A stretch of 64,000 nt of DNA. Source: Heteronotia binoei (lineage: Eukaryota). Shown here piece after piece: positions 1,323-61,816 of the stretch (its first letter is position 1; the number at the start of each line of letters is the position of its first letter). The translations under genes and the position numbers were made by a program. The notes under the pieces were generated by a model. It did not search any database. It was not told the origin of the DNA and saw only the letters and a list, made by a program, of their open reading frames with translations. The stretch covers positions 164,424,001 to 164,488,000 of the forward strand of contig NC_083243.1 of the NCBI RefSeq assembly GCF_032191835.1, written 5' to 3'.

Positions 1323-1733
1323 GTAAGGTGATGATTAGGAAGAAAAACTCCCTATTCAGACCATTCAGGACAGGCTTCTGTATCACCCCCAGGATTTTTA
1401 GTGTGATGACACTGGACTCATTTACATAATAACATAAGAAAAGCCATGTTGAATCAGGCCAGTGGCTCATCCAGTCCAACACTCTGTGTCACACAGTGGC
1501 CAAAAACTAGGTACAAAGCAGCAGCTGATGCAGGTCAAGAACGAGTCAAAAGTTTAGGAAAAGAGGAATAGTATAGACATTGCTACTCTGCTACTTGGAT
1601 ATACTCTTAGCCCAGATATTGTGAGGACATAAGATTTCAAATGCCTTTACTGGGTCCATGTGACGTGCAGAGCCGCCCCTCCACCTGCCCCCGATAAAGC
1701 GAGGGGAAATGGTTTAAATGAGCTGTATAGGCT

Positions 1734-1909
1734 CAGGACTGGATCTACATGTTTTTTTGGGGGGGCAAAATTAAAAAATGACACCCCCTTATGGGCTCAT
1801 TCTATCTAATGGGCCCATAGATAGAATGGACTCCATACCCAATTTGGTGCCCCCCCCACCAGCGCCCGGGCAAGCATCCCTCTCTGGCCCCCCCTCAGAT
1901 CCAGCTCTG
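1734..1909. mobile_element. hAT MITE
   Basis: Termini caggactggatct / agatccagctctg; 8-bp TSD tataggct / tgtaggct. Confidence 0.75.
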
Positions 1910-2437
1910 TGTAGGCTTCAGCGTTAGAAAAGGAAAGAGCCAAGCAGAGAAGGAATCATTAGCATCTGAGACTTGGACCTAGTCTGGAAAACTAGCCTCA
2001 ACTGCTCGTGCTGAAGTCTCAGGACAGTGTGCACATCTGTTGTGACTCACTGGCAAATGAAGTCCAAGTCTGGCTTAAAATGGTGAAACCTGGAATAGAT
2101 AATAAGAACCTGCTCTCCTGCCTTTGCTTGGCCAACAAGGCAGTGTGTTATGCTAGCTGGATGCCAAGCTCCACCTTTTTTTGCTTTAAGCCACCGACCT
2201 TGGGGGCCCTCCCCAGGTCTAAATTTGGCATGGACACCTTATAATAAAAACTCAGAAACTGGTGGGAGAAAGAAAGGAGGAAATATATTTGCTTGTTTCC
2301 TTCCCTTGGTCCTGGGACCAGTAAGCACATTCTTTATCAAGTGCTGAAAATTGAGGGGGGGGGGGATGTTTTCAGCTTGAAGCTGACCAAGACAAAATCT
2401 CTCTCTCTCTCTCTTCCTCCCCTCTTCCCTTTTGCAG

Positions 2438-2585
2438 GTATCTGGCTGCAGGTCCTGGAAGCGATTGGTATGTTGGCTGTCATTGCCAATGGCCTGGTGA
2501 TTTCTATCACCTCAGACTTCATCCCCATGCAAGTGTATAAATACACACTTGGCCCATGTGTACAGGAGAATTACACTGGCATAGA
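2438..2585 (+). CDS. ANO9: ANO9 exon: [49 protein letters not shown](D)
   Basis: Long pyrimidine tract ending tttgcag|g, donor ataga|gtgagt; phase 1 in and phase 2 out, compatible with both neighbouring exons; anoctamin GIW...AVIxNG...TSDFIP motif. Confidence 0.95.
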
Positions 2586-3474
2586 GTGAGTGCCGTGAAA
2601 GAGCAGACTAGCTGCACTGGGGATGCAGAATATGATAATCATTGTGGTAATTTCCTTCGAGCTGAAGCTCCTTCCCCATTGTCAAAACTGTGTGTGAGAG
2701 ATCATCTGTAAAGTAGGTCCCACATACTGGAGAGCGATTAGAAGATATTGAAAGATGTGTCAAAGGAAGAAGTTAGTACTATTTAAAGTGGGCAAAGTGT
2801 GGCAAGGGCAAGTGAGATGTTTTAAAAGTTAGCCTGGTTCCATTCCACTGGCAACAATGTTTCTGGTGTGTTTCTCCAGCTCAATGGGTGTTCCATTGAT
2901 AAGAAGAACATGCAGAACAGTCTTGCATCAGAGAAAGAAACTTTTGCATTGCAAGAATGTGCCATGAACACAAAAAGACACACAGTATCTTGCTAGACAG
3001 GCTCTGATTTGCATCCTGCCTCCATGGCGAATTTTGAGGACATGCACAGGTTAGAATTAGCTCTAGAAAGCAGTGTGCTTTTTCTTCCCAGTGTGCCTTC
3101 TCTGCTTTAGTCTGCCTCCTCTCCATGTAACTGTCCTGCCCTGTCTTGTCATATAACCCCCACTGCACAAAATTTAATTACATCCATCAAAAGCAAGGGC
3201 TGATAAGAGCTGCAGAGTGCACCAGTATCCTCCATGAGATAGGGAAGTAAAATTCCTATCAGGTTGTTGTTACTAGGCATAGAACAGGAGTAAAAGTTCA
3301 TTTGGATGGATAAGCAGAAGACACTGGAGTGACTTGCCCGTCTGTAACATGAACTATTATTCAATACAATGACAACAGCTGTTTCCCCAAAGTTATTTAA
3401 ATGTTTTAAAAGAGAGAATCTTATTATAGGTGAAAAAATCCTATGTAGAGGATTGATTTAAAATCTAGTTATAT

Positions 3475-30414: not shown

Positions 30415-30560
30415 ATTATAACCATATTCAGTTCATTTCTTTTATTATTACGGTCATTTGACCAAACATATAGTCAGTTTTACCGTTTGCACAATAACCG
30501 ACATTTATACAATAAAACATAATAAAATATAAACCTGGTTACAATACAATTTCCATAGCC
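30415..30560 (-). mobile_element. LINE 3' end fragment, possibly related to the 19565-22900 element
   Basis: The minus strand reads ...tggtcaaatgaccgtaataataaaaagaaatgaactgaa (stem-loop, poly(A) signal, gaactgaa tail). Confidence 0.5.
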
Positions 30561-33344: not shown

Positions 33345-33438
33345 ATGACTGTGAAGCTGCCCTTTCTTCTTTTTGTGACATCTGTGCCCTTGGCTCTTGC
33401 CACAGGGATTAAGCAAAAAAGGACAGCAGCCTTACAAG
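33345..33438 (+). CDS. SIGIRR: Putative first coding (signal-peptide) exon of the SIGIRR/DIGIRR-like gene: MTVKLPFLLFVTSVPLALATGIKQKRTAALQ
   Basis: Acceptor tttgcag| at 33320, ATG in caaaATGa context, donor caag|gtgaga; ends in phase 1, matching both downstream Ig exons; basic n-region, hydrophobic core and an A-L-A cleavage motif. Confidence 0.65.
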
Positions 33439-34899
33439 GTGAGACTAGAGAAGGAAAAAGTAATATTTTATGTTTGTTTGTGGTTGTTGGTTTTGCTACA
33501 CGCACAGAGCTAGTGGGTTTGTCAGTAAAGGCCCATGGTCTCATGCTGTTTTTCTTTTTCTCTGTCCTTGTTGCCTGACCTTAACAAATCACTTGCCTTA
33601 GCAAGTAAACTGTCTTTTCTGTAGAGGTGAATACCTCTTTTTGGAAGTGGTGGCCTTCATTCTGAGTATCAATATTTTGAGGGAGTATTTGAATTTAAGA
33701 TTTGAAACTTTGTTTTGAAAGGCATCCTTGTTCCCAATGGATTTGCACAGATTGCCTTGTTCCTAATGCCAGTTTTCACCCTGTTTCTGCTCTGGTTAGC
33801 CAGTGAGATTACGTTTGGGTAAATTCCCTCAATATTTACTCCCAGCTGCATCTTTTCCAATTATTCTTGACACCTCTCTTAATTCTGTAGCCTTTTGGCA
33901 GATGTTGCTGGCCTCTTCCTGGTTCCATATGAATTTCTAGTTGCTTGATAGGACTGGCTTTTCTCAGACAAAGGGTCTTACAGAAGTCAACCTGTGTCTT
34001 TCCAGGAAAGCTTCCTTTCTCCTTGTCTCCTGCGTTAAGATAATCTAGGGGTATATAAAGTAAGGGAGCTCAAATTGCATCCAATGTTCTTCTGAACTTC
34101 ACAGTTTAGCCTTGTTTGTAGCTTCTGCCCATGCATGCAGGACCTTTGAAGTGTAGGTCTGGAGATGGGATCTCACAATGCAGGAAGGTTCCAGGCAGTT
34201 GTGTTCTAAAGGGCAGCTCACCAGTGCAATAAATAGTGCAGCAATTTGCCACTAAATTAGTGGTAGCCAATCCTTTTGACCAGGATGCCATGTGCCCAAT
34301 CCAAAATATGAGACACTGTTGCTTTAGTGTGCGGCCTCCTATGTGTTGGGGTGGTTTTGCCTCTAGTCTGTGGGGCTCAGGAGCAGGCAGCAGTGTAATA
34401 GTGAACAGGCACATCAGTAGGTCTGACTTTACTATAGGTTAGGGGCTCTTATGCTGCAATTTAGATATGCCACAAAAACTGATTCCTTGTGCCATATGTA
34501 CATTGATTACTTATGCACTAAATTAAATACAAAGTTGCATATATAATTGGCACAATTATACCCCACTCTTAAGTTTTCAAAAACTCTGTGAAAGAAGTGG
34601 CTGAACTATAAATCTAGGAAGCAAGCTGACTATCTGCTGGCTGTAGTGCCATATGTCTGCATATAATGTTTTTATCTAAGTTAAGAAAGCTTTCCATACC
34701 CTGTTTACTGTCCTCAAATATGGGACATGTGGCTTTGAGGGTGTAGGAATGAATTATTCTTTCATAATGATTCCTAATGCAAAGTTTAATGTGATAACCT
34801 ACATTCCTAAAACTGTTTGAAATTATCTCAGTTGTTTGAACCTCGCAGTGCAAAGCTGTTGCCTTGCTCTGTTTCCTGGGAATGACAGAAAGGTGAACA

Positions 34900-35040
34900 A
34901 AATGGACAAAAGGAAATACTTCCTTACTCATCAAGGAATTCACTGCCAGCTGATATAGTGATGGCTGTAAGCATGGATAACTTTAAAGGAGCTTAGAAAA
35001 ATTCATGGAGGATAGGTCCATCAGTGGCTACTAGCCATAG
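34900..35040 (+). mobile_element. CR1 3' end fragment
   Basis: Similar to 57580-57710: ggaattcactgcc...gtgatggct...ggtccatcagtggctactagcca. Confidence 0.7.
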
Positions 35041-35054
35041 TTACTAATCAGAAC

Positions 35055-35730
35055 CCTCATATTGAGGGGGAACTGTCCCAGCGACACCCACTGGAATGTG
35101 GGGTGCTGCAGGGAACTGTTCTCTCTCCAGTGCTAACATCTATATGCGCCCCTTGCCCAGTTGGTCCAGAGGTATGGGCTGGGTTGCTATCAGTACATTG
35201 ATACCCGGTTGCAGGGCTTTTTTAAAAAGCAGGAATGCAGTTCCGGCTGGCTTGGCATCAGGGTGTGTGGTCTAATATGCAAAAGAGTTTCTGCAGGGCT
35301 TTTCCTGCAAAAGTCCTATGTGTAATAATTATGATGTTAGGTGGTGTGGCCTAATATGCAAATAAGTTCCTGCTGGGCTTTTTCTACCAAAAAAGCCCCG
35401 CCTGGTTGTATCTGTTGTTGGAAGAATGGACAGACTCCACCGCAGAGGTCTTGGGCAGGGCACTGCTAGCCATGACTGGTTGACTCCAAAAAAGCCAACT
35501 GAAATTAAATCCAGCAAAGACAGAGGGTTCTGTACCTGAGTTGTGGGGACCTGAGATCAGGAATCCAGCTCACAAGCCTTGATGGGATACTGCTAAAGCC
35601 AGTGCCGATGGTGAAAAGCTTGGGGGTGCTCCTGGATGCCTCTCTTTCAGTGGAGGCCCATGTTGCCACAGTTGCTTGATAGGCCTTTTATCATCTATGG
35701 CTGTCAGGCAACTGGTCCCATACCTCTCTT
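35055..35730 (+). mobile_element. L2 RT fragment interrupted by a MITE
   Basis: acatctatatgcgccccttgcccag...ggtatgggctgggttg matches the NIYMRPLAQ...YGLGCHQY segment of the other L2 copies; later KSLGVLLD-like segment. Confidence 0.75.
35212..35400 (-). mobile_element. hAT MITE, CAGGGCTTTTT family, inserted into an L2 fragment
   Basis: TIR cagggcttttt / aaaaagccccg; TSD cccggttg / cctggttg; internal duplication. Confidence 0.8.
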
Positions 35731-38248
35731 CCCAGGACTTAGCTACAGCCCAAATATAGGAGACAGAAGATTGCAAATGTATGGTAACCTTGATCATGGA
35801 GTACAGATGTAAGCCTTCACCCTACACAGCAGCCATTAGACTGAAGGGAAATAGATTGCTTACCTCTTGCTTCTCAGCAGCTATAGCTTGATGGAGGGCA
35901 GGATGTATGCCATGAATAACAAAGCTAAATTTTCCTCCAGGAGTCTTTAAACTGGTAGATGGTCTGCCCACCTTTGCAGTTTAAATAGTCCTTTTGGGAT
36001 GAATGATTAAAACTGATGGGAAAGTGCTTCCTTTAATCTTGATTGATTCACCCTAAATGGCAGCCTCTCTAACAGGTTAAAGGTTTTATGGGGGGACTGA
36101 GGAGCGGCATGCATACTATCAGGTACACATGTCCAAACTCCAATTTCAAAAGGACTTTTACATACAGCATGGGGAGGGCAAATAAACATACCCTTCTTCC
36201 TGTGTTGCTCTGCTTGGGTTCAGTGATGGATCAGAAACCTGAGCTATAAAGGAGGTTGGAAGGAAATTTTCTGTGTCCCCCTCACCTCGTATGATTCCAC
36301 TTTATTCTTCTACTGAACGCAGTGCTGTAAATTCAGTCCATATAAGCAGGTGTTCATTCCATTCAGCAGTTGTTTATTTAGCATAATTTAGTGGCTGAGA
36401 AACGTTGTTAAGTTTCTGTCTTTTTGAATGCATATTATTATTTTAAACTATGCACACCTGATATGCAAGAGTGTGTGGAGTGCTACATTTGAACATTTTT
36501 ATAGCTGTAGTTTTTCTGATGTATAGGTGGTTTCTTTAAATAGCTGGACTTGGCCATCCATGCTAAGTAATGCAGCAAACTTTCTACCTGTTTTCCCCAA
36601 AAGAAAAAGATGATGTCATCTGGGTCTGACCTCTTGGATTTGCTTCAGTGAAAATTGCTCCTCTGGGGAGATGTAATTTTCCATTCAGGCTTCTTGAAGT
36701 TTCATGAAGCTCTTGCTTCTGTAGTCACTGAGACTTAGTGTGTCATGCACACCAAGTTACAATGTCAAAGCAATATATGTCCCAAATATAAAAGCTATAG
36801 GTAGGTTGGAAGTTATGATAAACCTTATCTTTCTCTGCCCCTCCTTGGTACACAAAGTTTACATACGTTGGCTTGTGGACATGGGAAAAGTACTGACAGT
36901 GTCAATACAATAGTGTTCCTGTCTGCTGGACTGATAAATGGGATTATAATCCTTGAATTTTACATTAAATAGCCTTGTTCAGTTTTCACTGTTGCAACTG
37001 AGTAAACTGAACCACATTTTATAGATACTGTTTTTGAGTGAGTGAGCCATTACCTTGAAAAGAAAGTGTCTGAGCTTGAAAGTGTATGCATGGGAGAAAG
37101 GAGAAAAAAAGAAAATACTGATTTGTTGAACCACTAGTAAGTTACTTATTCAGTAAAGTCTATTCTTTATTATGGCATATTAAGTCTATTCTCTTTCTCC
37201 AAAGATCACTCAGTTTCTGTCTGATCTTATTAATGCTAACCTTTATATGGTGTCGGTGGTGTAATACCATGCTCCGCTATAATGGAGGGAGGTGAAGGGA
37301 TAGCTAATCTGACGTTCACATTTTGCCACTGTGCTTCATGAATGCTCCAGCACAGGCTCAGCACAGTGGGAAAATACTCAACCAGTGAGGAAGTGTAGAG
37401 TGAAACTTTCTGAAGTAAATTTTGGAAGATGGGGAGGCTTTTAAAGTTAACAGTAAATGGTATAGCACTACACAGCAAATAGCACAGTAGGATGCTGCAA
37501 AGCCATGACGTCCATTAGAAAACAGAAGTTCACAAACAGTGTGGTCATGGACTGGAAAGGAGGAGATCCTGTTCTTCAAGATCTATTAGAGAATCCATCT
37601 TCAGCTAGAGTAAGGACAACTATATGTATTGCACCTGAATAAAGCACTCCACCAATAAATGAGAGTATGTGCCGCTGTCTCTTGTGTGTGCATGTATTTA
37701 ATGGCTGTTATTAGTGATGTCTTTGGCACAGTAGGAGTCCATGACACTTGCATAGGCACACTCCACATAGCTCTTGCAGCAGCAGTGGTTGTGCTAGTGG
37801 CAGAAAGAATAACCTTTTCTCATTGAAAAGATAATATTGTTTCAGTGCTGGGAAAGTGAGATCCCGTGAACAGAGATAGAGCCCCTTGACTGCATACATT
37901 TCACAAGAAAGGAATAAATGTAACTCATTTATTTTATTACCTACCCATCACCTGGAAAATCTCCAATAATTTGGCAAGTATAGTTTGCTGCACAGATCTC
38001 TGCTATTTCGTTAGTACTCTCTTGGATGGCTGCATACAGATTTTTTTCTGTGTTTCTTTTCTCTTCTGCTAAGTTTGGGCTACCAGATGACCTCTTTTTA
38101 GAGGACATGCCCTCTTTTTTGGTGTCTGTCCTCTTTTGGGCTTTTTAAAAAAATGGATGAAATTGTCCACTTTTTGCCTTATAGTCCCCCTGTGGAGGCA
38201 AGCTGCAGCTTAAATAGTAGGAGTATTTAAAATTAGATTTGTCATAGA

Positions 38249-38407
38249 CAGGGGTCGCTTTGTAGAAAAATTGGTGGTGGAGCTCATCCAGGGATTGTTA
38301 TGTAGCTGCTCCTTCTATTCAATGGACAAGGTGGGGAGGAGGAGGGGGAACCCTCAGGAAGGTTTAGGAGCTCTGCTCCTGTGAGCTCCTGCTGAATCCG
38401 AGGCCTG
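38249..38407. mobile_element. hAT MITE
   Basis: Termini caggggtcg / cgaggcctg; perfect 8-bp TSD gtcataga (38241-38248 / 38408-38415). Confidence 0.8.
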
Positions 38408-41400
38408 GTCATAGAGATCAGTTGTTTGAAGTAGTCTATCAGGAAATTTTGCTTTTCAAAATATGGTAGCCCTAGCTAAGCATGGCTGGGATTTGGCAAT
38501 GTGCACAAAACTATAAGCAAAAATTTAACTCAGTTTTGCTTTACTGTATACTATTAAGTTCATCAGCACGAAAGCACGTATTTATATGAATCATAAAGCA
38601 TTTAATTGTTTCAATTTGTGGTTTGTCTATCTACGCTTCGGCCTGGGGCAAGCGGCTTTTAAGTACAGGTGCCTTTCAAGTTACACAGTTGATGTGGAAC
38701 AAGGAATGAAAAGTCTGCAGGGCCCCACTGGTTTTAATATTGGTTCAACCACCAGAATACTGACGAATTTTGCAAGGAAGCATTTTACGTAACAGTTACT
38801 AATCTAAATTTATTGTGGCAGTTTTTGCTTTTTTTTTTTTTAAGGTTGTGAAACCAATTTCCCAGTCTCGCAGCAACATATGTTCAGTTGTTTGTCTGCT
38901 GTATATATTATTATATAGAGAACAGGTTGATGCTTACAGTCCAGAAAGAAAGGGATCTCTTTATGTTACTCGTCTTTGCCCTAGGCTGCTCAGGGCTTTC
39001 ACAAAACCTGTTTCTTAGTCTCCGCACAAACAAAAAATCCATCTGGATTAGCTGCATCTCCTAACATAATGACATTTTGCATCTTTTTGTAATTGCTTGC
39101 CCAGGGCTCTGATCCTAAATACATTGGGTTGGAATAAGGGGTTTTGGGTTTTTTTTGCAATTTCATGAACTTGTTGTTTCCAAGTAAGTATGTTTAAAAA
39201 TGAATTGGTAGTCCACTACAGCTTTTGCAGATGAGTATATTTACCCTTTGGACTTAAGTGGACTTATGGTGCTGCATTGCATCTCTGGGTCAAGACCATT
39301 ATTTTTGGAGGCTTGAGGGTCTTTTGTGCAAAGGGCTAGAATGCAGCAGGGCATGAGATCACTAGTTGCCCGGATAAGTCATGCTGCTTAATACTTGTCA
39401 TTATTTGTAGTGTACTTATGTTTGAATTGAGTACAGGACATGGGGTTGTGGTACTGAGGGAATGCCTATATAAACTGACAGGAATACAAATGGCTGTCTA
39501 AAAGGCAAGTTGAATGAAATATATTGGTATGAGCAAAAGACAAGAGTACTAACTAGAAAGAAAGAAGAGCAAAGGAGTCAAACTTGATATAGCTAAGTTA
39601 CAAGTAAATGGACTTTAGTTCCGTTGAAATAAATAAGACATAAGAACATAACTTTCTGATGGATTATAGCTCTGGAGCTTAGTTGTAGTGTACAGAAGCA
39701 TCATGCCAGACGTCCATTTGCTTGAACTTCTGTAGTCTTATTTTTCCGGGAACATACATGCACATGATTACTTTATGCTGAAGCCAGTGCTTATATGATA
39801 ATGGCTACAGGGTATGCATCTCAAGGTTAGATAATTTCTCAAAGCCCTAATTCCTGCATGGTGCTGTCCACAACAGGCATGAGTGAAGAGCTGGTTCAGG
39901 GAAAGAAGTGGAGGGTCCAGTGAAAGAAGTGACTGAGAGTTGCTGCTGTAAGGCCCCAGCACAAACTGCTGCTGGCACTCTGTTGTCACAATGAAGCCTG
40001 TGTCACAAAGAAACACAGATTGTGTCTGATAAGAGAAATTGTGGAACAGAAGAAATATGTTTAGTAGGAATGCATGGTTCAAAGATTTTTTAGTAAGTCA
40101 ACACTGAAGTTTATCTGAATACCTTTCTTTTGGATAATGCTTTTTCTGTTTGTTTGTACTCATATATAAAGTTTCCACCGATTTCCTCCTTAGGGCTTAG
40201 ACAAGTGCCTCCACCCAAAGGTGCCAGTACTCAGTACTAGTGAGTACTGTCACACAAAAGATCTCTGCCTTTTGGAAGATGACATATTTGAGAAGCAGGA
40301 ATTAATTTCCTGTAGGAATTAATTTCCTTTGAGAAGAGTTCTTATTTTTGAGATTAATACTCCAATATCTGAAATTTACACGACTGAGGGCAGTGCTCTG
40401 ACTTTCAATTTGCCCTCTTTTTAAAACAGCAGGTTATTTGCATAAACAGGAAAAACGTACATCTTCCTGTAACCTCTTCATGGAGCCAGAAACAAGAGTT
40501 CTAAGTCAGCAGATAGGCAGCATATTTCCATACTAGTAGCTAAGGACCCAGCTCCAGTTATAGCAGTCCGACTTGGAGCAGCTCTTGAGGGCCTCAGGAA
40601 GAGGTCTTTCACATCACCTATCTAATCTTTCTAACTGGAGATGCTGGGCTTTGAACCTGGGACCTTGTTGAAGCAAAACAGATGCTGTACAATTGAGCCA
40701 CACTCCCTCCCCAAGTATGATGATGTTGGTTTTTTTCATTCATGTTTGCTGAGAGGAAGAGCATGAAATGAAATCATGTGGCAGGACTACTATATAGGTG
40801 ATTTCTCATGTAATATCCCTGATTATGACAGTGCAAACAAGCACTAAAAGCTACATGCCACTTGATTCCCAAATGTGTAACCTAAGGTACCTTTTAAAAT
40901 GTATTTACATTATTTATAGTTCGTCTTTCTCACTGAGACTCAAGGCATGTTATATAGTGAAAACAAGGAGAAATCTGTAACAGAAGTGAAACAAAGCATA
41001 CTCATTTAAGCATGACATGTTAAACCATGCAGAAAGTACATAGAAGGAGCATAATTGTAGGAGCATACTTGTAGCATCAGACAGATGTTATGAGGATCTG
41101 GTTTGTGCAAATCAACCATTCATTTTGTTATCACTTGCTGCGCTTCATATGCATAGCTCCATCAATAATAGCAACAGTGCTGTTACATAAATTATGTCAA
41201 CCACCCTTTTTAAGGCAAAGGGCCATGATAGTGATTCATGATACTTTAATTGTGAGACAATGATATAAACAAGTTGTTGGGAGAGGGACTCTATGGGTTT
41301 TAGTGGGAGGGGGAAGCAGCTTAGTTCCACTCTGCAGAGTCTTTAGACAACTGGACACATGCCCATGTTAGGCAATCACTGCTGGAGGAGAACAGTGACA

Positions 41401-41841
41401 TGTATACAATGAACACACTTTATTACCACGGTTATTCTGTCAGCAATTATAGAATAGCATATTTATGGTCACTGCATTTGGTGGTTTTATCATGTTGCCT
41501 CAGGAAAGCCTCCTGATACAGAAATGATGTTACAATTATCAGTGGATATAAAATAGTGAAATTGCAACTTTAAAAAATACTGATTATATTTGATTGCCTA
41601 TTTGAGAACGTTGGTCTATTTCCTTTTTCCGTACAGCTTGCTCCAGCTGTTTACCTCTTCTGAGTCTGTGTTTGTGTTATGTGTTGGGAGGAGAGTGGTG
41701 GAAATGTGTCTCCAGGGTTAATTAACTCATTAGAACCTAGATATGCTGGCTCATTTCTTGAGTTGCTTGAGAACTGATTGAACTAACCTGTACTTTCCCT
41801 AGTTTTCCATCAGTGCAACTGCAATAACACATTTTTCAAGT

Positions 41842-42736
41842 TGTGATGGTAATGAATGGGTTAACAAGAAAACTAAGGACGCATAGAGCCTGCGTCAGGT
41901 GATCTGAGGGTGGGGGCCAGAGTGCTCGGAACTCTCAGAGGTGATTGACAGCTAACGGCTGAGGGCAGTTAGTGTCAGACGGAGTCTGAGGGAGACTGCT
42001 GAAGAGAGCAGTGGGTCTGAGAAGGAGCTGAGACAGTAGCTGTGGAGAGTCTTTGAGAGAAGCAAAGCTCACTGTTCACTCTAGTTAGACAGTCACAGGG
42101 CTGTGTGTGACTAGAGGAGAGTCACAGTAAAAGACCTGAGAGGTCACAGACACAGAGACACTTCTCTTAAGAGCTAAAGAGGTGGTTGAGGGAAAGATGT
42201 GGGTCTAGAAGTCTAAAGGGCTGGGAGAAGAGACACCAGTCGACTTAAAGGACTTGGCACATTATACCCAAGAGGCCAACCCAGAATAGTGTTGGAGAGT
42301 GAAAGCTGTATGATCTGTGAAACCTGAGGGACCTAAGTGAACTAGATATTATAAAGCCTAAACTACGAAGAAACTGTTAACTGCTTGATATACAATATAG
42401 CCCATGTATATATTTCCCATTCCCCAGTTGAAGACGGTGTGTGTATGTTAATAAATTTCTGTGGTTTACTTTAAAGTTCTCTGGTGCCAGTATATTGGGA
42501 AAGATATCAAAACTGCTGTGGTCCCCTACCTACAAACTGAGGTTATATCCATCTGAAAGCAAAACAAACCCCCTGAAGAGACTAGTAGTGAGAAATCCAT
42601 ATTACAACCACCCCTTGAGTTCCATAGTCGTGAGGGAAAAATTCAAAAGGAAGAACTGAGGTGGAAGAGGGGCTGGGGTAGCCATAAGCCGCATATAGAA
42701 GTGATCCAGTGAGACCGTGAGGCGTGCTGTTATACA
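41842..42736 (+). mobile_element. Probable solo LTR (Gypsy-like)
   Basis: TGT...ACA termini, GA-rich R-like region, AATAAA at 42450-42455, flanked by aagt and (a)agt as an imperfect short TSD; no coding remnants. Confidence 0.55.
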
Positions 42737-43049
42737 AGTCTTGTATATTTAGTAAATCTATGAGGCAATCTTTCATTTTTCTTTCTATAATACAGATTTA
42801 GAATAGTCTCAGCTAGTTCAGTTCACTTAGAACAGTCTTAAGACCAGCATACAGGTTAATCAGACATAAAATACAAGAGGGATTTGAATCTTCAAAATGT
42901 GATCCTCTTAATTAAAGAATTAATGCACAGAATTTACCAACGCCATGTGATAGATTCAGCTAGGCCTCCTGTGACCAGTGTGAGTGTGGACTGCATGGAG
43001 GATGATTGTGTCCTGCTTGCTGTAGAAGTGTGAACTTGATTGTGAGTGA

Positions 43050-46000
43050 TGGGAGTAGTTGCAATTAAACTGATATGCTTTATCTGTCTGTATCCCATCC
43101 CAATGGGGTCAGGTCAAATTACTTGCCTCCGTCATTGGTGTTATGCAATGCCAGGTCCATTAATAATAAGACCAATCCTTCGGGACTTCCTATGGACTTG
43201 GCTTGTGTGACTGAGACCTGGGTGAGAGATGGGGAGACAGTAGCTCTCTCCCAGGTGGCTCCCCCGGGATACTCAGTCTTTCACCAGTCATGAACTAGCG
43301 GGCGGGGGGGAGGAGTGGCCCTATTCATATGGGAGGCTTACTCCTTCCAGGCCCTCCTGTCTCCAAAGGTCAATGGCATCGAATGTGCTGGTCTGGCATG
43401 GGATGTTGGGGAGGGTTTGGGGGTCTGCCTGGTGTACCAACTGCCTAATGCCCCAGCCAACGCCTTACCGTCCCTGATGGAGGCCGTAACAGGCTGGGCA
43501 TTGGAACACCCAAGGATTTTGGTCTTGGGTGATTTCAGTCCATGCCGATGACGAGGACTCTAGTTAGGCGGCGGAACTGGTGTCATCCATGGCAACACTA
43601 GGACTCTCCCAATTTGTTACAACACCCATGCATCAGACCAGGCACATGCTGGATTTGATCTTTGCGATGGGAATCTTAGTGGACCGGATCACTGAGGAAG
43701 CAATACCGTGGTAGGACCACTACACTCTGAAGGCTTGTATGGATGTGCCACCCCAAACCTGTTTAGTTGGCAAGCATATTTTAGCTCGCCCATGGAACCT
43801 GATGGACTCAGTGCGGTTCTAGATGGCCCTGCAGGACCCCTGGCCCCCCAGCAATTCTCTAGAGGACCTGGTTGAGACCTGGCAAGACCGGCTCACCATG
43901 GCCATCAATGAGATTGCACCATGGTGCCCTCTGCGCCCTCGTTCAAAGCTGGCCCTGTGGTATAACCCAGAGTTGCGGCTGCTGAAACTAAGGCTCAGAC
44001 AGCTAGAGAGGCGGTGGTGGCGTACTCGAGATGAAGCGATCAGAACATCTTATAAAGAGTTTATGAGGTCCTATGAGATGGCAGTCAAAGCCACAAAAAA
44101 AGCTTATTTTGTGGCTAAGACTGCATCTGCGAATTTGCGCCCGGCATAATTATTTAGTATCATTCAGAATCTTACAACTACCCCAAGGCAGACAAAACTG
44201 TAGGGATTTGGATATAGTCTGTGAGGCTTTTGCGACTTTTTTCGCAGATAACATCTCGTCGCTCTGCAATGACTCCCTGCCACTGTTGAAGCAGTAAGGG
44301 AACTCAAAGCTCCGTACCTCTTTTCCAGGTCAGCTCTGGAGGAAGTCGACAGAATTCTCTCTACTGTGCACCCAACAACATGTGACCTGGACCCTTGCAC
44401 ATCCTGGCTGATTAAAGCTTGTTGGTTGGAGCTACGATATCCTATACGGGATATCGTAAATAGATCCCTCTCTGAGGGGCTCTTTCCAGGGCCTCTCAAA
44501 GAGGCAGTGGTCTGCCCTCTCTTGAAAAAACCATCACTAGATCTGGCAGAATTGGCACACTATCGGCCAGTCTCGAATTTGCCCTTTTGGGGCAAAATTA
44601 TTGAGAGGGCAGTAGTGCTACAGTTACAGAGTTTTCTGGAGGACGCTTCCATCCTGGACCCGCATCAGTCCGGTTTTCGCTCAGGTCATGGGGTGGAGAC
44701 AGTACTGGTCGCCCTGGTGGATGATCTCCAGTGGCATCTGGACCGAGGCAGTTCAGGATACTGATGTTGTTGGACCTGTCGGCTGCATTCGACACGGTCG
44801 ACCATCATTTGCTGATTCACCGCCTCGCTGACGCAGGGATTCAGGGGTTGGCCTTATAATGGCTTTCCTCTTTTCTCCATGGTCAGGGACAAAAGGTGGT
44901 GATCGGGGGACAGTCATCCCAGAGGCACTCACTTAACTGTGGAGTGCCTCAGGGGGTGGTGCTCTCCCTAATGCTGTTCAACATCTATATGCGCCCCCTT
45001 GACCAGATTGCCAGGAGGTATGGGTTGGGTTGCCATCAGTACGCTAATAACACCCAGCTCTGTCTACTGATAGACAGTCGGTCTGCCTGTACCCCAGAAA
45101 ATTTGGGTCTGGCGCTGAAGGCCGTGGCAGGGTGGCTTAAGCTGAGTCGACTGAAGCTGAATCTGACAAAGACAGAGGTCCTTTGCCTGAGCCGCAGCAG
45201 CCCGGGAAGGGGAATCCCCCTACAAACTTTTGATGGTGCGCCACTTGCAACAGCACCCAAGGTCAGAAGCTTCGGGGTGCTACTGGAACCTTCATTGATA
45301 ATGGAGGCCACTGCCAAATCCACCTTTTTCCCTCTTAGGCGGGCAAGGCAGTTGGTCCCTTTCCTCGACTGTGGCGACCTAGCAATTGTGACCCACACTA
45401 CGGTTGCCTTGAGATTGGACTACTGTAGTGCCCTCTACATGGGGCCACCCTTGTCTCAAATCCGGAGACTGCAGCTGGTGCAGAATGCAGCGGCTAGGCT
45501 GTTATTGGAGCTTCTCATGCGGGAGGACATACAGTCCGCGCTGCGGGAACTGCACTGGTTGCTGTTAGTGTACCGGATTAGCTACAGGGTGCTGGTTATT
45601 ACCTTTAAAGCCCTATATGTCTTAGGGACCTATATGGCTTAGGGACCATCTCTTCCCATATGTTCCCCAGAGGGTACTCAGATCAGGGACACAGAACCTG
45701 TTATTGATCCCTGGGCCGAGGGAGGCAAGATTGAAGACCAATCGGGAGAGAGCCTTCTCTATAGCGGCCCCCTATTGGTGGAACCAACTTCCGGAAGAAG
45801 TAAGAGCGTTGTGGGACCTTGCCCAGTTCCGCAAGGTTTGCAAGACAGCTTTATTTCAACTTGCTTTTAATTGATAGCTACATGTGAGGATACTCAAGAC
45901 TTAAGTTATTGGAATCTACCATTAGCACCAAATTGTTTTAAAATGTTTTAATTGTTATACTGTTTAAGGTTTTAATTAGTTAATGCTCAGTATTTGTAAA

Positions 46001-46086
46001 TGTTTTTATTGTTGTAAGCCACCCTGAGCCCACTTTGGCGGGGAGGGTGGAATATAAATCCAATTAAACAAATACATAAATAAATT
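43050..46086 (+). mobile_element. Older, degraded, near-complete L2-clade LINE ORF2 (endonuclease + RT), same family as 7214-9255
   Basis: Fragments LCNARSINNKT, LACVTETW, GGGVAL, LVLGDF (APE endonuclease), HYRPVSNLPF, GVPQGVVLS, LQLVQNAAARLL; many stops and frameshifts; 3' end gccaccctgagccc...aatataaat with an A-rich tail. Confidence 0.9.
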
Positions 46087-46110
46087 TATTTCTGACTTAT
46101 TTCTCTTCAG

Positions 46111-46450
46111 CCTTTGATATATCCTGTGTGGACCCAGATCGCTTTTACAGTCACACTCTGTGGATCCAACAACATTTTAGTTAAACATTTGGTTAAAGAT
46201 TTGTTTTGCCTATTGGATAAGCAGAGCCTCCAGCTACTGCAAACTACCTCAGCTTTTAATGTTGATTGGAGCAAAGACTGTCATCCACTTAACCTCAGTG
46301 CTTCAGGATGCCAACACAGCACACTGCACAACAAAACTTCCTATCTCTCCTTTGAGCACATAGAGGCTGAGGATTCAGGCAATTATACCTGCACACTCTA
46401 CTTGAATGAACAGAGAAACGCCTCCTTCACTATTTGGCTGGTCATGGCAG
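46111..46450 (+). CDS. SIGIRR: Extra Ig-like domain exon (IL-1R1 D2-like) of the SIGIRR/DIGIRR-like gene, with an apparent +1 frameshift near 46175-46178
   Basis: Acceptor ttctcttcag|c, donor gcag|gtgagt (phase 1). Ig hallmarks LFC...DWSKDC...LSFEHIEAEDSGNYTC. The phase-1 entry frame reads AFDISCVDPD...QQHFS then TAA at 46182-46184, one base out of frame with the Ig core. Confidence 0.7.
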
Positions 46451-47744
46451 GTGAGTCAAGGGAGTGGGGAAGTTGACCACCAGTTTAACTCTGGAGTGAA
46501 AACCTTACACCTTTGCCGCCTCTTATACTAGTGCTCCAGACAGGTCCTTTTCCTACTTGTTTGGCTTAGCAGTCTGACAAAGGAAAACTGAAATATCTAA
46601 CTATGAATAGAAGTTTATTTTTTAATGTCTGCCATAACATATAATTCCACTCTTTCTGGGCTGCAGTGAGTAAATTGTGAAAGTAGATGTCCATCTGCCT
46701 ATGAGAGAATGGTAGACATTTAGTTCCTTTTGTGTGCCTGTTCCCATTGCACATGTTAGGTTTAGTCCTGATTAATTTTATAATGGCAGAATGGAACTTT
46801 CCCACCTCCCTTCTCCTACTTTAGCCCACTGATCTCTACAAAATGCTCCTCCTGGGGGAATAGGGAACCCTGAGGAATGCTATGAGGGGGCTCTGCAGCA
46901 GGAAGGGGAAACCGGTGGAAACTGATAATTTGGTCTGAATCCATCCTCCTTATATCATACAAAAGAACAGTGAATACCATTGTAAGAGCAGTATGTAGTC
47001 AGATTGCTATAATTCAGTGAAAATGACCCTGTCTCCCTGCACATACTACATTCTGTTGTGGAGGTACAACTTAGATGTGAAAGAAGGCTTCAGAGTTCAG
47101 TAACTATTAACAGTGAGTGATGAGGCTTGAAATGCGAGAAAAGTGTCTGCAGGTGCTAAAAAGAGTGCAAAAAACCACATTCACCCCTGCTCCATGTAAA
47201 TAAATACGAGATTAAGAATAGCTGTGCTTGATATTTAATGTGCGTGTTCTGGGTTTTGTTTTTTAAATATGCCACTCCTTATAACTTTATAAATTACTTG
47301 CAGGTAATGTTAACAATAGCTGTGAGCTGTCAGATTTTTGGACATGAAATAAATAAAACAGACAAGAGATTAGATCTTTTATTTTCAATTCAGTATTAAA
47401 GGAGTGTAATGTAGCAGTTGGGACAGATAAGTATGCTGTCATTTCTGCTTTATTATCTTGTATGGCACATTTAAACTACAAACTGTGAAACTATAAATCG
47501 GAAAGGAGCATTTTATTATGGTGTTAGCAACATGAATCAGCCTAAAGTAGTTTTGGGCAGTCCATTGTATTTCCTTTTTTTTTTTTTTTTCAAAAAACCC
47601 ACCTTTGTTTTGTTAAGATGCTTTTTTAGGATTCTGAAAGTTGTCCTGGCTCAGCTAAGGATTGGATATGGATCCCAGAGAAAAGTTGAGGAGGCCCCAC
47701 CAGTACATATCTTGTAATGTTCCCTTTTTCAAAAACTGTGAGCT

Positions 47745-47960
47745 AAGAAGTGGGGAATGGTGAGACCATCAGACTAGGATCTGGGAGAGCCAGGTTCAAA
47801 TCTCCCCTCTGCCATGAAACTTGTTGAGTGGCTCTGGGCCAGTTGCACACTTTCTGCCTAACCTTCCTCACAGGGTTGTTGTGAGGATTAATGTGGCAAG
47901 GGAAAATATCTGTTGCTATGAAATCTTTAGAGGAAGGGCAAGTTAAAAAATTTATTTAGA
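47745..47960 (+). mobile_element. Older MIR/Squam-like SINE
   Basis: ccaggttcaaatctcc B-box; ctcacagggttgttgtgaggatta CORE-like segment. Confidence 0.7.
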
Positions 47961-48709
47961 TGGGATTAGGTAGATTTTTGGGGGTGAGAAGGATTTCTGG
48001 CTGAGAGAAGGAAGCTCTGGTAGAATAGAAAGAAGTGTGAGAGCTGATTAAAGCGTGCTTTAGTGGTTTGGCCTACCACTGTCCTGTAGGACCCCTGGCC
48101 TACCCCTCTATCTATTTTTCATAAAGCGATGCAAGTCTCACTTCTCTCCTGCCCCCCCCTTCCCTTTAAAGGAATGACTTCTGTAAGCTGATAAAAGGCT
48201 AGGCTAAGGTGCATGGATGGATGAACTGGCATCGTGGGGAATGAAGGGGAAAGAACATCATGCTGGACTCTGAACAGAAATTGAGAGTGCAGTATGTCTC
48301 TAAAAACAATTTTTTTTGCCAGATCTCAGCTACATGTAATTGAGCTCCGTATTCCTCTTTTATTCTGAACACCTCTATAGTGATACTTTTTACGCTTTCC
48401 AGGGAATAGTGGCTATGACTTTTCTCTGTAGCCCATGCTGAATTTTCTTGAGTCGAATTAAAGGTGCTGAATGAAGGAGTGGATATATACAAAAATACAG
48501 ATGGTTAAACTGGTTAGCTTTCAAAACAGAAGGGGAAGTAGTTGAGTTTCATCAACCAAACTATCAGAATAGGGATAATGCTTAGATGCAAGGCATCTTT
48601 TTGACAGGGTTAAATACTGTGCATAGCATTTTTGGTGTGCAATCTGGTAGTAGAGTACCCTTATTCAAAATCTCTCTGCTGATGTGCTGTTCTTTTGTCT
48701 TTCTAACAG

Positions 48710-48887
48710 ATCTTTGCAGTGTGCTACCCAAATTCCTCTACCCTTCTAATAATGTGACTTTGGAGCACACTTTAGGGAGCCAGTTAACATTGAACTGCAC
48801 TGTGCAGCTGCCCTTTAGCCAGAACTGTGACCTTGCCCTTTACTGGATGAAAGATGACCAGTGGTTAGATGGTAATACCACCCAATG
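48710..48887 (+). CDS. SIGIRR: SIGIRR Ig domain exon, first half: DLCSVLPKFLYPSNNVTLEHTLGSQLTLNCTVQLPFSQNCDLALYWMKDDQWLDGNTTQ(W)
   Basis: Acceptor ttctaacag|a, donor aatg|gtaaga; resembles the SIGIRR / IL-1R1 D3 pattern PxFLxPS...LGSxxxLNCT...WxKD. Confidence 0.92.
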
Positions 48888-49314
48888 GTAAGAAAATTTA
48901 CCTATGAAGTTTGTGTAAAGTGGAGACAACAGGATGTGTAAAATGAAGGCAATAGAGATGGGGGGAAAGGCTAACAAGAATTATTTGCAAACGAATGTTT
49001 TTCCTGGGTTAAAGTTAAGAGCCATTTTTCAAAAATAGACTACAAGCAATTAGCCTTTGTGGAATAAAGGGCAGTTATGCAGTGATGGTATATAACCTGT
49101 GAGAAAGAATAGCAAAGTTAGCTTTAGGGACTGAAAATATGATCGCTATATTTTTGAAAAAGAGTGTTTAGCTTCAGCGCTAGAGAACAAGAGTGTGCAA
49201 AGAGGAAAGGATGGGTCTCAGTGAGATGTTGCTGTGCTGATGGGGAATAACCTTAATAGATTGTGCATTTCTGAAACATGAATACTCCATCATGTTAATT
49301 TACAGCAGAGGAAT

Positions 49315-49620
49315 CAGGGCCACATTACGACTTTTGTGGGGCCTAAGTACTTTTGCCTTTGTGAGCTGTTCCCACTATAATAATATCAATATTAAAATTA
49401 TTTTTCATGTAACTTGAAATACTTGACTTTTTTCTGCTTTAGGAAAAATTTAATAGATTTTCATGGGCCCTAAAATTTCATTTTTCTGATGTGAGAAAAC
49501 AAATTAAAATATTTTCTTTGACCCTAAAACATTTTTTCCTTTTGATTTTAAAAGAAATTTAAACATTTTTGTGCATCCTAGGCAATGTGCCGACTGTGCC
49601 TAATAGAAAAGTCAGCCCTG
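49315..49620. mobile_element. hAT MITE with CAGGGC termini and an AT-rich interior
   Basis: Termini cagggccac / gtcagccctg; degenerate TSD agaggaat / agagaagc. Confidence 0.6.
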
Positions 49621-50073
49621 AGAGAAGCACTGAGTCCAGCAACAAATTTTTACATTTTTAGCAGTAATAAAATATCTGTTGTAACTGCATAGTGGAGATG
49701 CTTATTTGAAAAAAGACATTTGGAACTACAGAAAGAATTGAGCAATCCCAGCGCTTTCATAGAAAAATAATTCTGGAAAGTCCCAAATAAGATAAACTTT
49801 TGCAGAACAGACACTCTGGGCAGTCAGTTTTCTATTATAAAATATCTTCATGTTATTATAATGGCTGTATTCCCAGAGTGGTGAATTGTATGGGAATAAT
49901 AATGGCACTTATGACCCATCCATGTCCAAAATTCAGTGTTTCATAAAGAGACATAGGGGTAGAGCTCCACTAAACCTCTCTTCAATCAAGCTCTTGACAG
50001 GAATTCGCGGGTGTCCCCCCCCATCTTTTCCCCTTTTAAATAATATAAACTCAAAATATTTATGATTCATCAG

Positions 50074-50204
50074 GTTCAATGACAATGCAACAGAGATATT
50101 TGTCTCCAGCGCTTTGGATGTGAATGTGACTACTGATGAGAATTATGGAGATTTTGCCTGCTTGGTTAGAAACAGCACAGCAGTTTTCACACTGCAAAAA
50201 TCAG
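50074..50204 (+). CDS. SIGIRR: SIGIRR Ig domain exon, second half: WFNDNATEIFVSSALDVNVTTDENYGDFACLVRNSTAVFTLQKS
   Basis: Acceptor catcag|g, donor tcag|gtattg; phase 2 to phase 1; contains the YGxFxC Ig F-strand motif. Confidence 0.92.
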
Positions 50205-58506: not shown

Positions 58507-58650
58507 CAGAGGCTGCTGGGCACTTGGGTGCTGTGCTAGCTGCATTCATCATCCTGACATTATTGATACTAATGAGCGTGACATATGTGAAGTGTCGTCT
58601 GAATGTGCTGCTGTGGTACAGGAACCGTTATGGCGATCTGGAGATTAATG
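58507..58650 (+). CDS. SIGIRR: SIGIRR transmembrane exon: AEAAGHLGAVLAAFIILTLLILMSVTYVKCRLNVLLWYRNRYGDLEIN
   Basis: Acceptor ccttttacag|c, donor aatg|gtaatc; hydrophobic helix followed by the SIGIRR-diagnostic YVKCRLNVLLWY. Confidence 0.95.
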
Positions 58651-59320: not shown

Positions 59321-59464
59321 ATGGCAAGCTCTATGATGCCTATGTGTCTTACGCTAACTCAACAGATGACAGAAAATTTGTGAACTTCATAATGAAACCA
59401 CAGCTGGAAAATCGTTATGGTTACAAACTCTTCCTAGATGATAAAGATATCCTTCCCAACTCAG
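59321..59464 (+). CDS. SIGIRR: SIGIRR TIR exon (box 1): [48 protein letters not shown]
   Basis: Acceptor tttcccacag|a, donor tcag|gtagag; [14 protein letters not shown] box 1 and GYKLFLDD motif. Confidence 0.96.
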
Positions 59465-61200: not shown

Positions 61201-61303
61201 AGCCTTCTGCAGATCTGATAATGAATGTCAGCCGGTGTCGTCGCCTCATTGTCGTTCTTTCTAATGCTTACCTGGAACAGGAATGGTGCAACAGTAATTT
61301 CAG
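61201..61303 (+). CDS. SIGIRR: SIGIRR TIR exon: [34 protein letters not shown](R)
   Basis: Acceptor ttttccccag|a, donor tcag|gtaaga; EPSADL...[11 protein letters not shown] is a SIGIRR signature. Confidence 0.96.
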
Positions 61304-61665: not shown

Positions 61666-61816
61666 GGAAGGTCTGTGGAGACTGTTGGAACTGTCTCAGA
61701 GGCCAATCTTTGTTGCCTTCGAGAGCCAGTACCGGGAAATAGCACATCCAGCCATTGATTTGCTGAAGCAGCACAAGAACACGGTGACTCTGCTGATATG
61801 GTGTGCTGGTTCCATG
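61666..61816 (+). CDS. SIGIRR: SIGIRR TIR exon: [51 protein letters not shown]; the remaining exons lie beyond the window
   Basis: Acceptor tttcatttccag|g, donor catg|gtaaat; phase 2 to phase 0; REGLxRLLEL..RPIF..FE..HPA..LL.QH motif. Confidence 0.95.

What the first reader, a model, noticed from the sequence alone, without database searches (positions are those of the whole stretch)
33345..50204. A squamate SIGIRR with a two-Ig, DIGIRR-like ectodomain
Seen in sequence: upstream of the canonical SIGIRR Ig exons (48710, 50074) lies a further 340-bp exon with canonical splice sites. It encodes an Ig fold (LFC...DWSKDCHPL...LSFEHIEAEDSGNYTC) with four N-glycosylation sequons (NLS, NKT, NYT, NAS). 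Established knowledge: mammalian SIGIRR has one Ig domain, homologous to IL-1R1 D3. IL-1R1 D2 carries WYKDC and GNYTC plus an extra disulfide between an A-strand Cys and the WxKDC Cys. Teleost DIGIRR has two Ig domains. Inference: this exon is the D2 homologue, so the locus (syntenic with ANO9, as SIGIRR is in human) retains the ancestral two-Ig architecture in an amniote. That would place loss of the first Ig domain later and make it lineage-specific. I cannot tell whether this is already annotated for reptiles.
Basis: partly seen in the sequence, partly recalled or inferred. Interest (0 to 1): 0.85.

Follow-up and report, generated by a model that had tools for sequence, protein, structure and literature searches.

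The report
Broken second-Ig exon in gecko SIGIRR
The extra exon is a real relic of the ancestral two-Ig form of the immune brake SIGIRR, which many reptiles still make, but in this gecko (Heteronotia binoei) it is frameshifted, so the gene as assembled encodes only the ordinary single-Ig protein.

Summary
The 340-bp exon (46111-46450) is real. It has AG/GT splice sites and the quoted motifs and sequons. It is the orthologue of the N-terminal Ig exon of two-Ig SIGIRR/DIGIRR: 48% identity to the sturgeon cluster that holds 'DIGIRR [Acipenser sinensis]', and E 1e-40 against a profile built without the window.

The window is Heteronotia binoei. Here the exon carries 13 extra bases relative to the intact 327-nt exons of two other geckos: a 12-nt tandem duplication plus one base. 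'SCVDPDRFY' lies in one frame and 'LFC...WSKDC...GNYTC' in another. Reading from the conserved signal-peptide exon (33345-33438) stops at TAA 46182-46184.

RefSeq annotates only 410/408-aa single-Ig proteins for this species. They start at ATG 46444, seven bases before the exon's donor.

About 550-aa two-Ig 'single Ig IL-1-related receptor' models already exist for 13 squamates, the gharial, a newt, sharks and sturgeons. Birds and turtles are single-Ig, and turtle mRNAs still carry the dead exon as an upstream ORF.

So this is not a retained two-Ig receptor. It is probably a young, lineage-specific loss, but I could not check sequencing reads and a one-base assembly error is not excluded. No paper in the searched library describes two-Ig SIGIRR in tetrapods.

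The parts
33345..33438 (+). Ancestral signal-peptide exon (94 nt, ends in phase 1). In this genome it opens a 55-codon ORF rather than the receptor ORF.
   Evidence: It is 71-81% identical to the annotated leaders of Sphaerodactylus, Paroedura, Euleptes and Eublepharis SIGIRR. Spliced to 46111, it terminates at TAA 46182-46184.
43084..46084 (+). LINE insertion of about 3 kb, ending 26 nt upstream of the D2 exon's acceptor. It is specific to the Heteronotia lineage. Boundaries are approximate.
   Evidence: Reverse-transcriptase ORFs (Pfam RVT_1). The flank 42950-43083 is homologous to the sequence directly 5' of the D2 exon in Paroedura (L011:23402-23532) and Sphaerodactylus (L001:12926-13054).
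46111..46450 (+). D2-type (DIGIRR Ig1-type) Ig exon, frameshifted: 340 nt against 327 nt in intact geckos.
   Evidence: AG/GT sites. Pfam Ig_2 26.9 bits and I-set 23.5 bits, each just under its cut-off. Sturgeon DIGIRR cluster at 48% identity, E 7.5e-14. The D2 profile splits between two frames: profile positions 4-25 in frame 2 and 25-113 in frame 0.
46173..46203 (+). Lesion zone. CATTTTA stands where relatives have six bases (+1). It is followed by the tandem 12-mers GTTAAACATTTG / GTTAAAGATTTG. The stop TAA is at 46182-46184 in the leader's frame.
   Evidence: DNA alignments against Sphaerodactylus and Paroedura show a net +13 nt. Stop position.
46444..46450 (+). Annotated start of the single-Ig protein: ATG GCA G|gt, the 'VMA' at the end of the D2 exon.
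   Evidence: The CDS range of P0178 (XP_060118167.1) maps here, and L002 is identical to the window over 20,557 nt. The exon model reproduces residues 1-286 of P0178 exactly.
48710..48887 (+). First exon of the retained Ig domain (IL-1R D3 equivalent).
50074..50204 (+). Second exon of the retained Ig domain.
58507..58650 (+). Transmembrane and juxtamembrane exon.
59321..59464 (+). TIR exon 1.
   Evidence: Pfam TIR
61201..61303 (+). TIR exon 2.
   Evidence: Pfam TIR
61666..61816 (+). TIR exon 3. The remaining exons lie beyond the window; the CDS ends near window-equivalent 89471.
1118..2586 (+). 3' exons of ANO9, the syntenic neighbour.
   Evidence: Pfam Anoctamin, E 3.4e-21 and 1.2e-5.

Best explanation
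The window is the SIGIRR (IL-1R8) locus of the gecko Heteronotia binoei.

The 340-bp exon is the orthologue of the N-terminal Ig exon of the ancestral two-Ig SIGIRR. In fish this form is called DIGIRR, and the domain is the counterpart of IL-1R D2. Most squamates still encode it behind a cleavable signal peptide.

In the Heteronotia lineage the exon has been disabled. There is a +1 shift and a 12-nt tandem duplication early in the domain, between the A-strand cysteine motif and the LFC motif. A 3-kb LINE has landed 26 nt from the exon's acceptor. Several otherwise invariant residues have been replaced.

A transcript that joins the leader to this exon therefore carries only a 55-codon upstream ORF. 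The receptor is made from ATG 46444, the conserved Met at the very end of the dead exon (context GTCATGG). The product is a leaderless single-Ig, TM and TIR protein of 410 aa. Bird, turtle and, by the literature, mammalian SIGIRR have the same layout.

Shown: homology, the frameshift, the lineage-specific insertion, and the annotated product.

Inferred: that the lesion is real in the animal, that ATG 46444 is the start used in vivo, and that the protein still acts as a TIR-domain brake on IL-1R/TLR signalling.
For: - Identity of the locus: 0 mismatches to GCA_032191835.1 over 20.6 kb. The exon model equals residues 1-286 of P0178.
- Homology of the exon.
- Frameshift.
- Intact 327-nt exons and 546-aa two-Ig proteins in Paroedura (same family, Gekkonidae), Sphaerodactylus, Euleptes and Eublepharis; Heteronotia has only 410/408-aa isoforms.
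- The LINE is absent from Paroedura and Sphaerodactylus.
- Heteronotia-specific changes at sites constant from sharks to lizards: FCPLD>FCLLD, VNH>VKD, YDH>YSH.
- On the Heteronotia branch, leader+D2 has 3 synonymous and 16 non-synonymous changes, against 8 and 7 in D3+TM+TIR (Fisher p = 0.03).
- Precedent in turtles: two independent RNA-seq contigs carry the leader plus a frameshifted D2 exon as a 128-codon upstream ORF, followed by a 417/418-aa single-Ig ORF starting MEDLCS. The Emydura genome has a D2 pseudo-exon with a stop and a frameshift.
Against: - I could not inspect reads. The +1 lies in a run of four T. Removing one T would give an open exon with a 4-residue insertion, so a single-base assembly error would produce the same picture.
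- The rest of the exon is still 78% identical to Sphaerodactylus, has no other stop in its own frame, and keeps both splice sites.
- The excess of non-synonymous changes is not significantly greater than in Paroedura (p = 0.22). Any loss must therefore be recent.
- Use of ATG 46444 after one leader AUG and three further upstream AUGs (46259, 46308, 46406) is an annotation, not a measurement.
Confidence: 0.72

Rival explanations
1. The frameshift is a one-base assembly error. Heteronotia then has an intact two-Ig SIGIRR with a 4-residue (VKHL) insertion.
For: The extra base sits in a T4 run. The remainder of the exon is open and well conserved, with all four cysteines, both splice sites and four sequons kept. 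Every other annotated gecko has the two-Ig form.
Against: The lesion zone is complex, with several substitutions plus a diverged 12-nt duplication, rather than a clean homopolymer slip. Invariant Pro, His and Asp residues next to it are replaced. A lineage-specific 3-kb LINE sits 26 nt from the acceptor. The NCBI pipeline produced no two-Ig or 'low quality' model for this species.
Confidence: 0.2
2. The exon still contributes protein through a different splice pattern. One route is skipping: 33438>48710 is in frame and gives signal peptide plus a single Ig domain. The other is a cryptic acceptor at 46179-46180, which would restore the frame and give an Ig domain lacking its A strand.
For: Both junctions are in frame (for skipping; the sequence for the acceptor at 46181). 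RefSeq lists three transcripts for the 408-aa isoform, which implies several 5' variants.
Against: There are no transcript data here. The cryptic acceptor has a purine-rich, poor polypyrimidine tract. The truncated domain would lose the cysteine that pairs with WSKDC. Both annotated proteins start at MADLCS, not at the leader.
Confidence: 0.1
3. The exon is not part of SIGIRR at all: a chance ORF, a piece of a transposable element, or a separate gene.
For: It lies only 26 nt from the 3' end of a LINE.
Against: Orthologous exons sit at the same position in SIGIRR of four other squamate genomes and in a spliced 2.8-kb transcript. Profile E 1e-40. The LINE is a later insertion.
Confidence: 0.01

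Closest known systems
DIGIRR (double-Ig IL-1R-related molecule) of teleosts and sturgeon
   Same: Same gene lineage and layout: signal peptide, N-terminal Ig, second Ig, TM, TIR and C-terminal tail. The window's exon is 48% identical to the cluster that holds 'DIGIRR [Acipenser sinensis]'. DIGIRR occupies the SIGIRR chromosomal position, and no fish has both (PMC9020223, PMC9448908).
   Different: In this genome the first Ig exon is out of frame, so no two-Ig product is encoded. DIGIRR has been described only in fish. I did not compare directly with a teleost DIGIRR sequence.
SIGIRR / IL-1R8 / TIR8 of birds and mammals (single Ig, about 410 aa, no signal peptide)
   Same: The annotated product here (410 aa, MADLCS...) has the same architecture and start position as chicken (MAEFCS...). 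The human protein is also 410 aa (PMC3482685), and mammalian SIGIRR lacks a signal peptide (PMC9448908). ANO9 synteny is shared (PMC4090809 for chicken and human).
   Different: Here the ancestral leader and a nearly complete D2 exon are still present upstream. In the chicken mRNA the 1.2-kb 5'UTR has no significant D2 remnant.
Two-Ig 'single Ig IL-1-related receptor' RefSeq models of other reptiles (Paroedura picta X1, Sphaerodactylus townsendi, Anolis carolinensis X1, Python bivittatus X1, Gavialis gangeticus X1 and others)
   Same: Orthologous leader and D2 exon with the same phases and splice sites. An intact 552-aa form is present in a spliced RNA-seq contig (L006).
   Different: Those exons are 327 nt and open. 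The Heteronotia exon is 340 nt and broken.
Turtle SIGIRR with a fossil D2 exon
   Same: A frameshifted D2 exon is retained in the mRNA as an upstream ORF. The main ORF starts at the Met at the exon's end.
   Different: It is an independent and older event. Emydura also has an in-frame stop and a Cys>Tyr change.
IL-1R1 / IL1RL1 / IL1RAP domain 2
   Same: Four-cysteine pattern (SC...LFC...W-x-K-[DN]-C...NYTC). The profile's best stretch is in D2 of four family members. The Foldseek top hits are IL1RAPL1, IL-1R1 and IL-18R-alpha ectodomains.
   Different: Sequence similarity is weak (E 1e-5 to 1e-3), and generic I-set domains such as titin score as well or better. No D1 equivalent exists in the window.

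Membership tests
SIGIRR / IL-1R8 orthologue | Ig domain, single TM segment, TIR domain and long C-terminal tail | tested here: met
   The exons translate exactly to residues 1-286 of XP_060118167.1. Pfam TIR. The tail is present in P0178 but is encoded beyond the window.
SIGIRR / IL-1R8 orthologue | Conserved synteny with ANO9 | tested here: met
   Anoctamin exons at 1118-2586 on the same strand, upstream.
DIGIRR-type two-Ig receptor | N-terminal Ig exon homologous to DIGIRR Ig1 | tested here: met
   48% identity and E 7.5e-14 to the sturgeon DIGIRR cluster. Profile E 1e-40.
DIGIRR-type two-Ig receptor | Signal-peptide exon | tested here: met
   33345-33438 is orthologous to the annotated gecko leaders. 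No signal-peptide predictor was run.
DIGIRR-type two-Ig receptor | One continuous reading frame from leader through Ig1 to Ig2 | tested here: not met
   Stop at 46182-46184. The exon is split between two frames.
DIGIRR-type two-Ig receptor | Two-Ig mRNA or protein expressed in this species | not testable with these tools
   No reads or transcripts of H. binoei were available. RefSeq lists only 410- and 408-aa products.
IL-1R family domain 2 | Best similarity to D2 rather than D1 or D3 of IL-1R paralogues, with the extra A-strand to C'-region disulfide | tested here: inconclusive
   The best stretch is in D2 for IL1RL1, IL1R2, IL1RAP and IL1R1, but in D1 for IL1RL2. Foldseek gives family-level matches only.

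The most novel reading that the evidence does not exclude
Single-Ig SIGIRR did not arise once. It is the repeated end state of decay of the same exon, at least four times in amniotes: mammals, birds, turtles and Heteronotia. Crocodilians and most squamates keep two Ig domains. Each time, the new start codon is the conserved Met at the 3' end of the dead exon. Heteronotia binoei would be the youngest known case, with close relatives that still make the two-Ig form. That makes it a natural experiment on what the first Ig domain and the signal peptide do.
Probability: 0.55. Interest if true: 0.6.

Novelty: new member of a known kind. Interest (0 to 1): 0.45.

Why it matters
SIGIRR/IL-1R8 is a widely studied brake on IL-1 and Toll-like receptor signalling. 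In the papers I read, its single Ig domain and missing signal peptide are described as the standard vertebrate form, and DIGIRR is described only in fish.

The data here show that the two-Ig form with a leader is the ancestral state of jawed vertebrates. It persists in sharks, sturgeons, a salamander, a crocodilian and most lizards and snakes. The single-Ig form arises by decay of one exon, whose last Met becomes the start codon. That explains why amniote single-Ig SIGIRR has no signal peptide.

It also bears on the claim that SIGIRR shows no sign of IL-1R ancestry (PMC5861070), because the lost domain has the IL-1R D2 signature.

For this window the practical message is narrower. The gene should not be annotated as two-Ig unless reads overturn the frameshift.

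Tried and rejected
- **Word-indexed search with the exon:** it found nothing, so no ORF-level copies from other gekkonids or from independent H. binoei data could be recovered.
- **Locus look-ups for Paroedura X2 and Eublepharis X2:** these failed because only the longest isoform is on record. Paroedura X1 succeeded later.
- **Alternative phase-0 leader exons between 28 and 46 kb:** none was credible. The problem turned out to be the frameshift, not a missing exon.
- **A third (D1-like) Ig exon in 30000-48700:** none found.
- **A D2 relic in the chicken 5'UTR:** a tblastn extension looked suggestive, but the profile search gave no hit, so I rejected it.
- **CpG island at the leader:** none, which is uninformative.
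- **TE or chance origin of the exon:** rejected.
- **A single 13-nt duplication as the lesion:** it fits worse than a 12-nt duplication plus one base (my reading).
- **Second structure job for the window's own broken domain:** not run, because the ortholog model was enough for the family-level fold comparison.
Full report
**1. What is in the sequence**

The exon at 46111-46450 is 340 nt, with AG before it and GTGAGT after it. In frame 0 it is open. It joins 48710 in frame.

The downstream exons can be delimited so that they translate exactly to residues 1-286 of one database protein. These are the Ig exons 48710-48887 and 50074-50204, the TM exon 58507-58650, and the TIR exons 59321-59464, 61201-61303 and 61666-61816.

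Pfam places the exon at the Ig_2 and I-set thresholds (26.9 against 27 bits, 23.5 against 23.7 bits). ANO9 3' exons lie upstream on the same strand.

**2. The flaw in the observation**

The leader exon (33345-33438, 94 nt) ends in phase 1, but the Ig core is open only if the exon starts in phase 0.

Orthologues explain why. They read ...SCVDPDRFYDHTVWTQQDSVNHLFCPLD... in a single frame. In the window 'SCVDPDRFY' is in frame 2 and 'LFC...' is in frame 0.

- tblastn with the Sphaerodactylus protein splits the exon into 46110-46172 and 46192-46449 in different frames.
- A D2 profile built without the window matches profile positions 4-25 in one frame (E 3e-8) and 25-113 in the other (E 1e-40).
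- DNA alignment against the intact 327-nt exons of Sphaerodactylus (L001:13088-13414) and Paroedura (L011:23563-23889) shows 13 extra bases.
- The extra bases are two tandem 12-mers (GTTAAACATTTG / GTTAAAGATTTG), preceded by CATTTTA where the relatives have six bases.

**3. Which genome, and how it is annotated**

The window is identical over 20,557 nt to Heteronotia binoei GCA_032191835.1, CM063345.1.

RefSeq gives this species only XP_060118167.1 (410 aa) and XP_060118168-70 (408 aa). Both start MADLCSVLPKF. That CDS begins at ATG 46444, and 'ATG GCA G|gt' is the last seven bases of the D2 exon. The annotators' model therefore uses the exon's donor but treats the rest of the exon as untranslated.

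**4. What the exon is**

An exhaustive HMMER search of 1.84 billion representative proteins returned mostly multi-Ig proteins, plus four single-stretch hits. One of them, P0033 (48% identity, E 7.5e-14), is a 547-aa sturgeon protein. Its 90% cluster contains UAB59905.1, 'DIGIRR [Acipenser sinensis]'.

Searches seeded with it and with the gecko protein found proteins of about 550 aa named 'single Ig IL-1-related receptor' that carry this domain:

- Squamates: Sphaerodactylus, Euleptes, Eublepharis, Paroedura (isoform X1), Elgaria, Hemicordylus, Varanus, Lacerta, Sceloporus, Anolis, Rhineura and Python (isoform X1).
- Other vertebrates: Gavialis, the newt Lissotriton, three sharks, sturgeons and paddlefish.

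A 2.8-kb Logan RNA-seq contig (L006) encodes an intact 552-aa two-Ig squamate protein as one uninterrupted ORF. The form is therefore transcribed and spliced somewhere in squamates.

The domain is strongly conserved from sharks to lizards: SCVDxDRFYDH..W...LFCPLD...W.K.C...GNYTCTLYL...SFT.

**5. Is it the IL-1R D2 equivalent?**

A profile of the domain against PDB sequences puts its best stretch in D2 of IL1RL1 (126-177), IL1R2 (147-205), IL1RAP (135-197) and IL1R1 (about 140-181). For IL1RL2 the best stretch is in D1. Generic I-set domains such as titin score at least as well.

An AlphaFold model of the Sphaerodactylus ectodomain has mean pLDDT 84. Its best Foldseek matches are IL1RAPL1, IL-1R1 and IL-18R-alpha ectodomains.

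Together with the four-cysteine pattern and the position next to the D3-equivalent domain, this makes the D2 assignment reasonable. It is not proven.

**6. Is the break real and lineage-specific?**

For:

- All four other annotated geckos have intact two-Ig models, including Paroedura of the same family.
- The lesion zone is complex. The two 12-mers already differ from each other, and the bases before them differ from the relatives at several positions.
- Residues constant in all 16 other sequences are changed next to the lesion: Pro in LFCPLD, His in VNH, Asp in FYDH.
- A 3-kb LINE with reverse-transcriptase ORFs has inserted 26 nt upstream of the acceptor. It is absent at that spot in Paroedura and Sphaerodactylus. 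The CTGAC branch-point candidate remains.
- Parsimony assignment with Paroedura as sister gives, on the Heteronotia branch, 3 synonymous and 16 non-synonymous changes in leader+D2, against 8 and 7 in D3+TM+TIR (p = 0.03).

Against:

- Paroedura shows a milder version of the same contrast (5/8 against 11/5; p = 0.14), and the two lineages do not differ significantly (p = 0.22).
- The extra base lies in a run of four T. Apart from this shift the exon has no other stop in its own frame.

I put the probability that the loss is real at about 0.75. It must be young.

**7. How the gene then works (inference)**

With leader and D2 exon in the transcript, the leader AUG opens a 55-codon upstream ORF. 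Three more AUGs (46259, 46308, 46406) precede AUG 46444, which has a good context (GTCATGG). Alternatively, transcripts may start downstream of the leader or skip the exon. Skipping is in frame and would give a signal peptide plus a single Ig domain.

Turtles are a direct precedent. Two independent RNA-seq contigs (L009, L010) carry the leader plus a D2 exon with one frameshift, as a 128-codon upstream ORF. A 417/418-aa ORF starting MEDLCS follows at once. The main ORF is 97% identical to Terrapene SIGIRR.

The Emydura genome shows a D2 pseudo-exon with an in-frame stop, a Cys>Tyr change and a frameshift. Its annotated protein starts inside the relic, MLYLKGHRNSSFTIRLAMEDLCS.

Chicken, Python X2, Lerista and Paroedura X2 proteins all start at the same Met (MAEFCS / MADLCS). 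The start codon of single-Ig SIGIRR is therefore the conserved Met of the ...[RQ]L.MA-D-LC... end of the D2 exon. This accounts for the reported lack of a signal peptide in mammalian SIGIRR (PMC9448908). I did not examine mammalian sequence.

**8. Distribution**

- Two Ig domains: sharks, sturgeon and paddlefish, teleost DIGIRR (from the literature), a newt, the gharial and most squamates.
- One Ig domain: all listed birds (about 410-415 aa), turtles (about 417-434 aa) and Heteronotia. From the literature, also mammals, zebrafish and carp (PMC9448908).

The gharial keeps the domain while birds and turtles lack it, so those two losses are independent. Heteronotia and mammals add two more.

**9. 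Literature**

DIGIRR is treated as a fish molecule and as a 'transitional' form (PMC3482685, PMC3705552, PMC9020223, PMC9448908). A 2025 survey of more than 400 species describes SIGIRR-like proteins as having one Ig domain or none (PMC12108812). A 2018 study found no evidence for IL-1R ancestry of SIGIRR (PMC5861070).

I found no paper describing two-Ig SIGIRR in tetrapods. The library searched is open-access only, and Gu et al. 2011 (the DIGIRR discovery paper) could not be read.

**10. Verdict**

The exon and its homology are real, and the evolutionary inference is right for reptiles in general. However, reptile two-Ig models are already in RefSeq. This locus, as assembled, is an example of the loss rather than of retention.

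Noticed in passing
window 43084-46084: A 3-kb LINE (reverse-transcriptase ORFs, AT-rich 3' tail, possible AATTAAAC target duplication) inserted 26 nt upstream of the D2 exon's acceptor. It is absent at the orthologous spot in Paroedura and Sphaerodactylus. It may have weakened inclusion of the exon before or after the frameshift.
   Followed up: partly
window 54000-57650: A second, longer LINE with a largely open reverse-transcriptase ORF (418-aa stretch; RVT_1 E 2e-35) in the intron between the second Ig exon and the TM exon. It helps explain why the CDS spans 43 kb here, against about 18.5 kb for the same part of the gene (from the end of the D2 exon to the stop codon) in Sphaerodactylus.
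   Followed up: no
L009 266-652 and 691-1944; L010 249-635 and 674-1930: Turtle (emydid-like) SIGIRR mRNAs retain the signal-peptide exon and a once-frameshifted D2 exon as a 128-codon upstream ORF ahead of the single-Ig main ORF. The uORF is called with a GTG start in L009, so the true initiation codon was not checked.
   Followed up: partly
L007 9759-10054: The Emydura macquarii genome has a D2 pseudo-exon with an in-frame stop, LFC>LFY and a frameshift. The RefSeq protein (434 aa) starts inside the relic, at MLYLKG.
   Followed up: partly
P0180, P0177, P0179 (proteins): Species with an intact two-Ig isoform (Python, Paroedura) also have predicted leaderless MADLCS isoforms. A short isoform may therefore pre-date loss of the D2 exon and make that loss tolerable. 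The Lerista record has only the short form.
   Followed up: no
window 61666-61816: In TIR exon 3 Heteronotia has IWCAGSM where other squamates have W[RH]A[GS]SM. This puts a new cysteine at a conserved Arg position.
   Followed up: no
L008 1-1223: The chicken SIGIRR mRNA contig has a 1.2-kb 5'UTR. A tblastn extension hinted at a D2 remnant just upstream of MAEFCS, but the D2 profile found nothing significant.
   Followed up: yes
window 12413-12775, 58130-58279, 58655-58831, 59822-60147: Repeated short ORF fragments with the motif ...FLVEKAQQELI...LGHTP... and ...ELFLSKAVLEELSQPHL... recur in introns and intergenic DNA. They are presumably a SINE or other interspersed repeat family.
   Followed up: no
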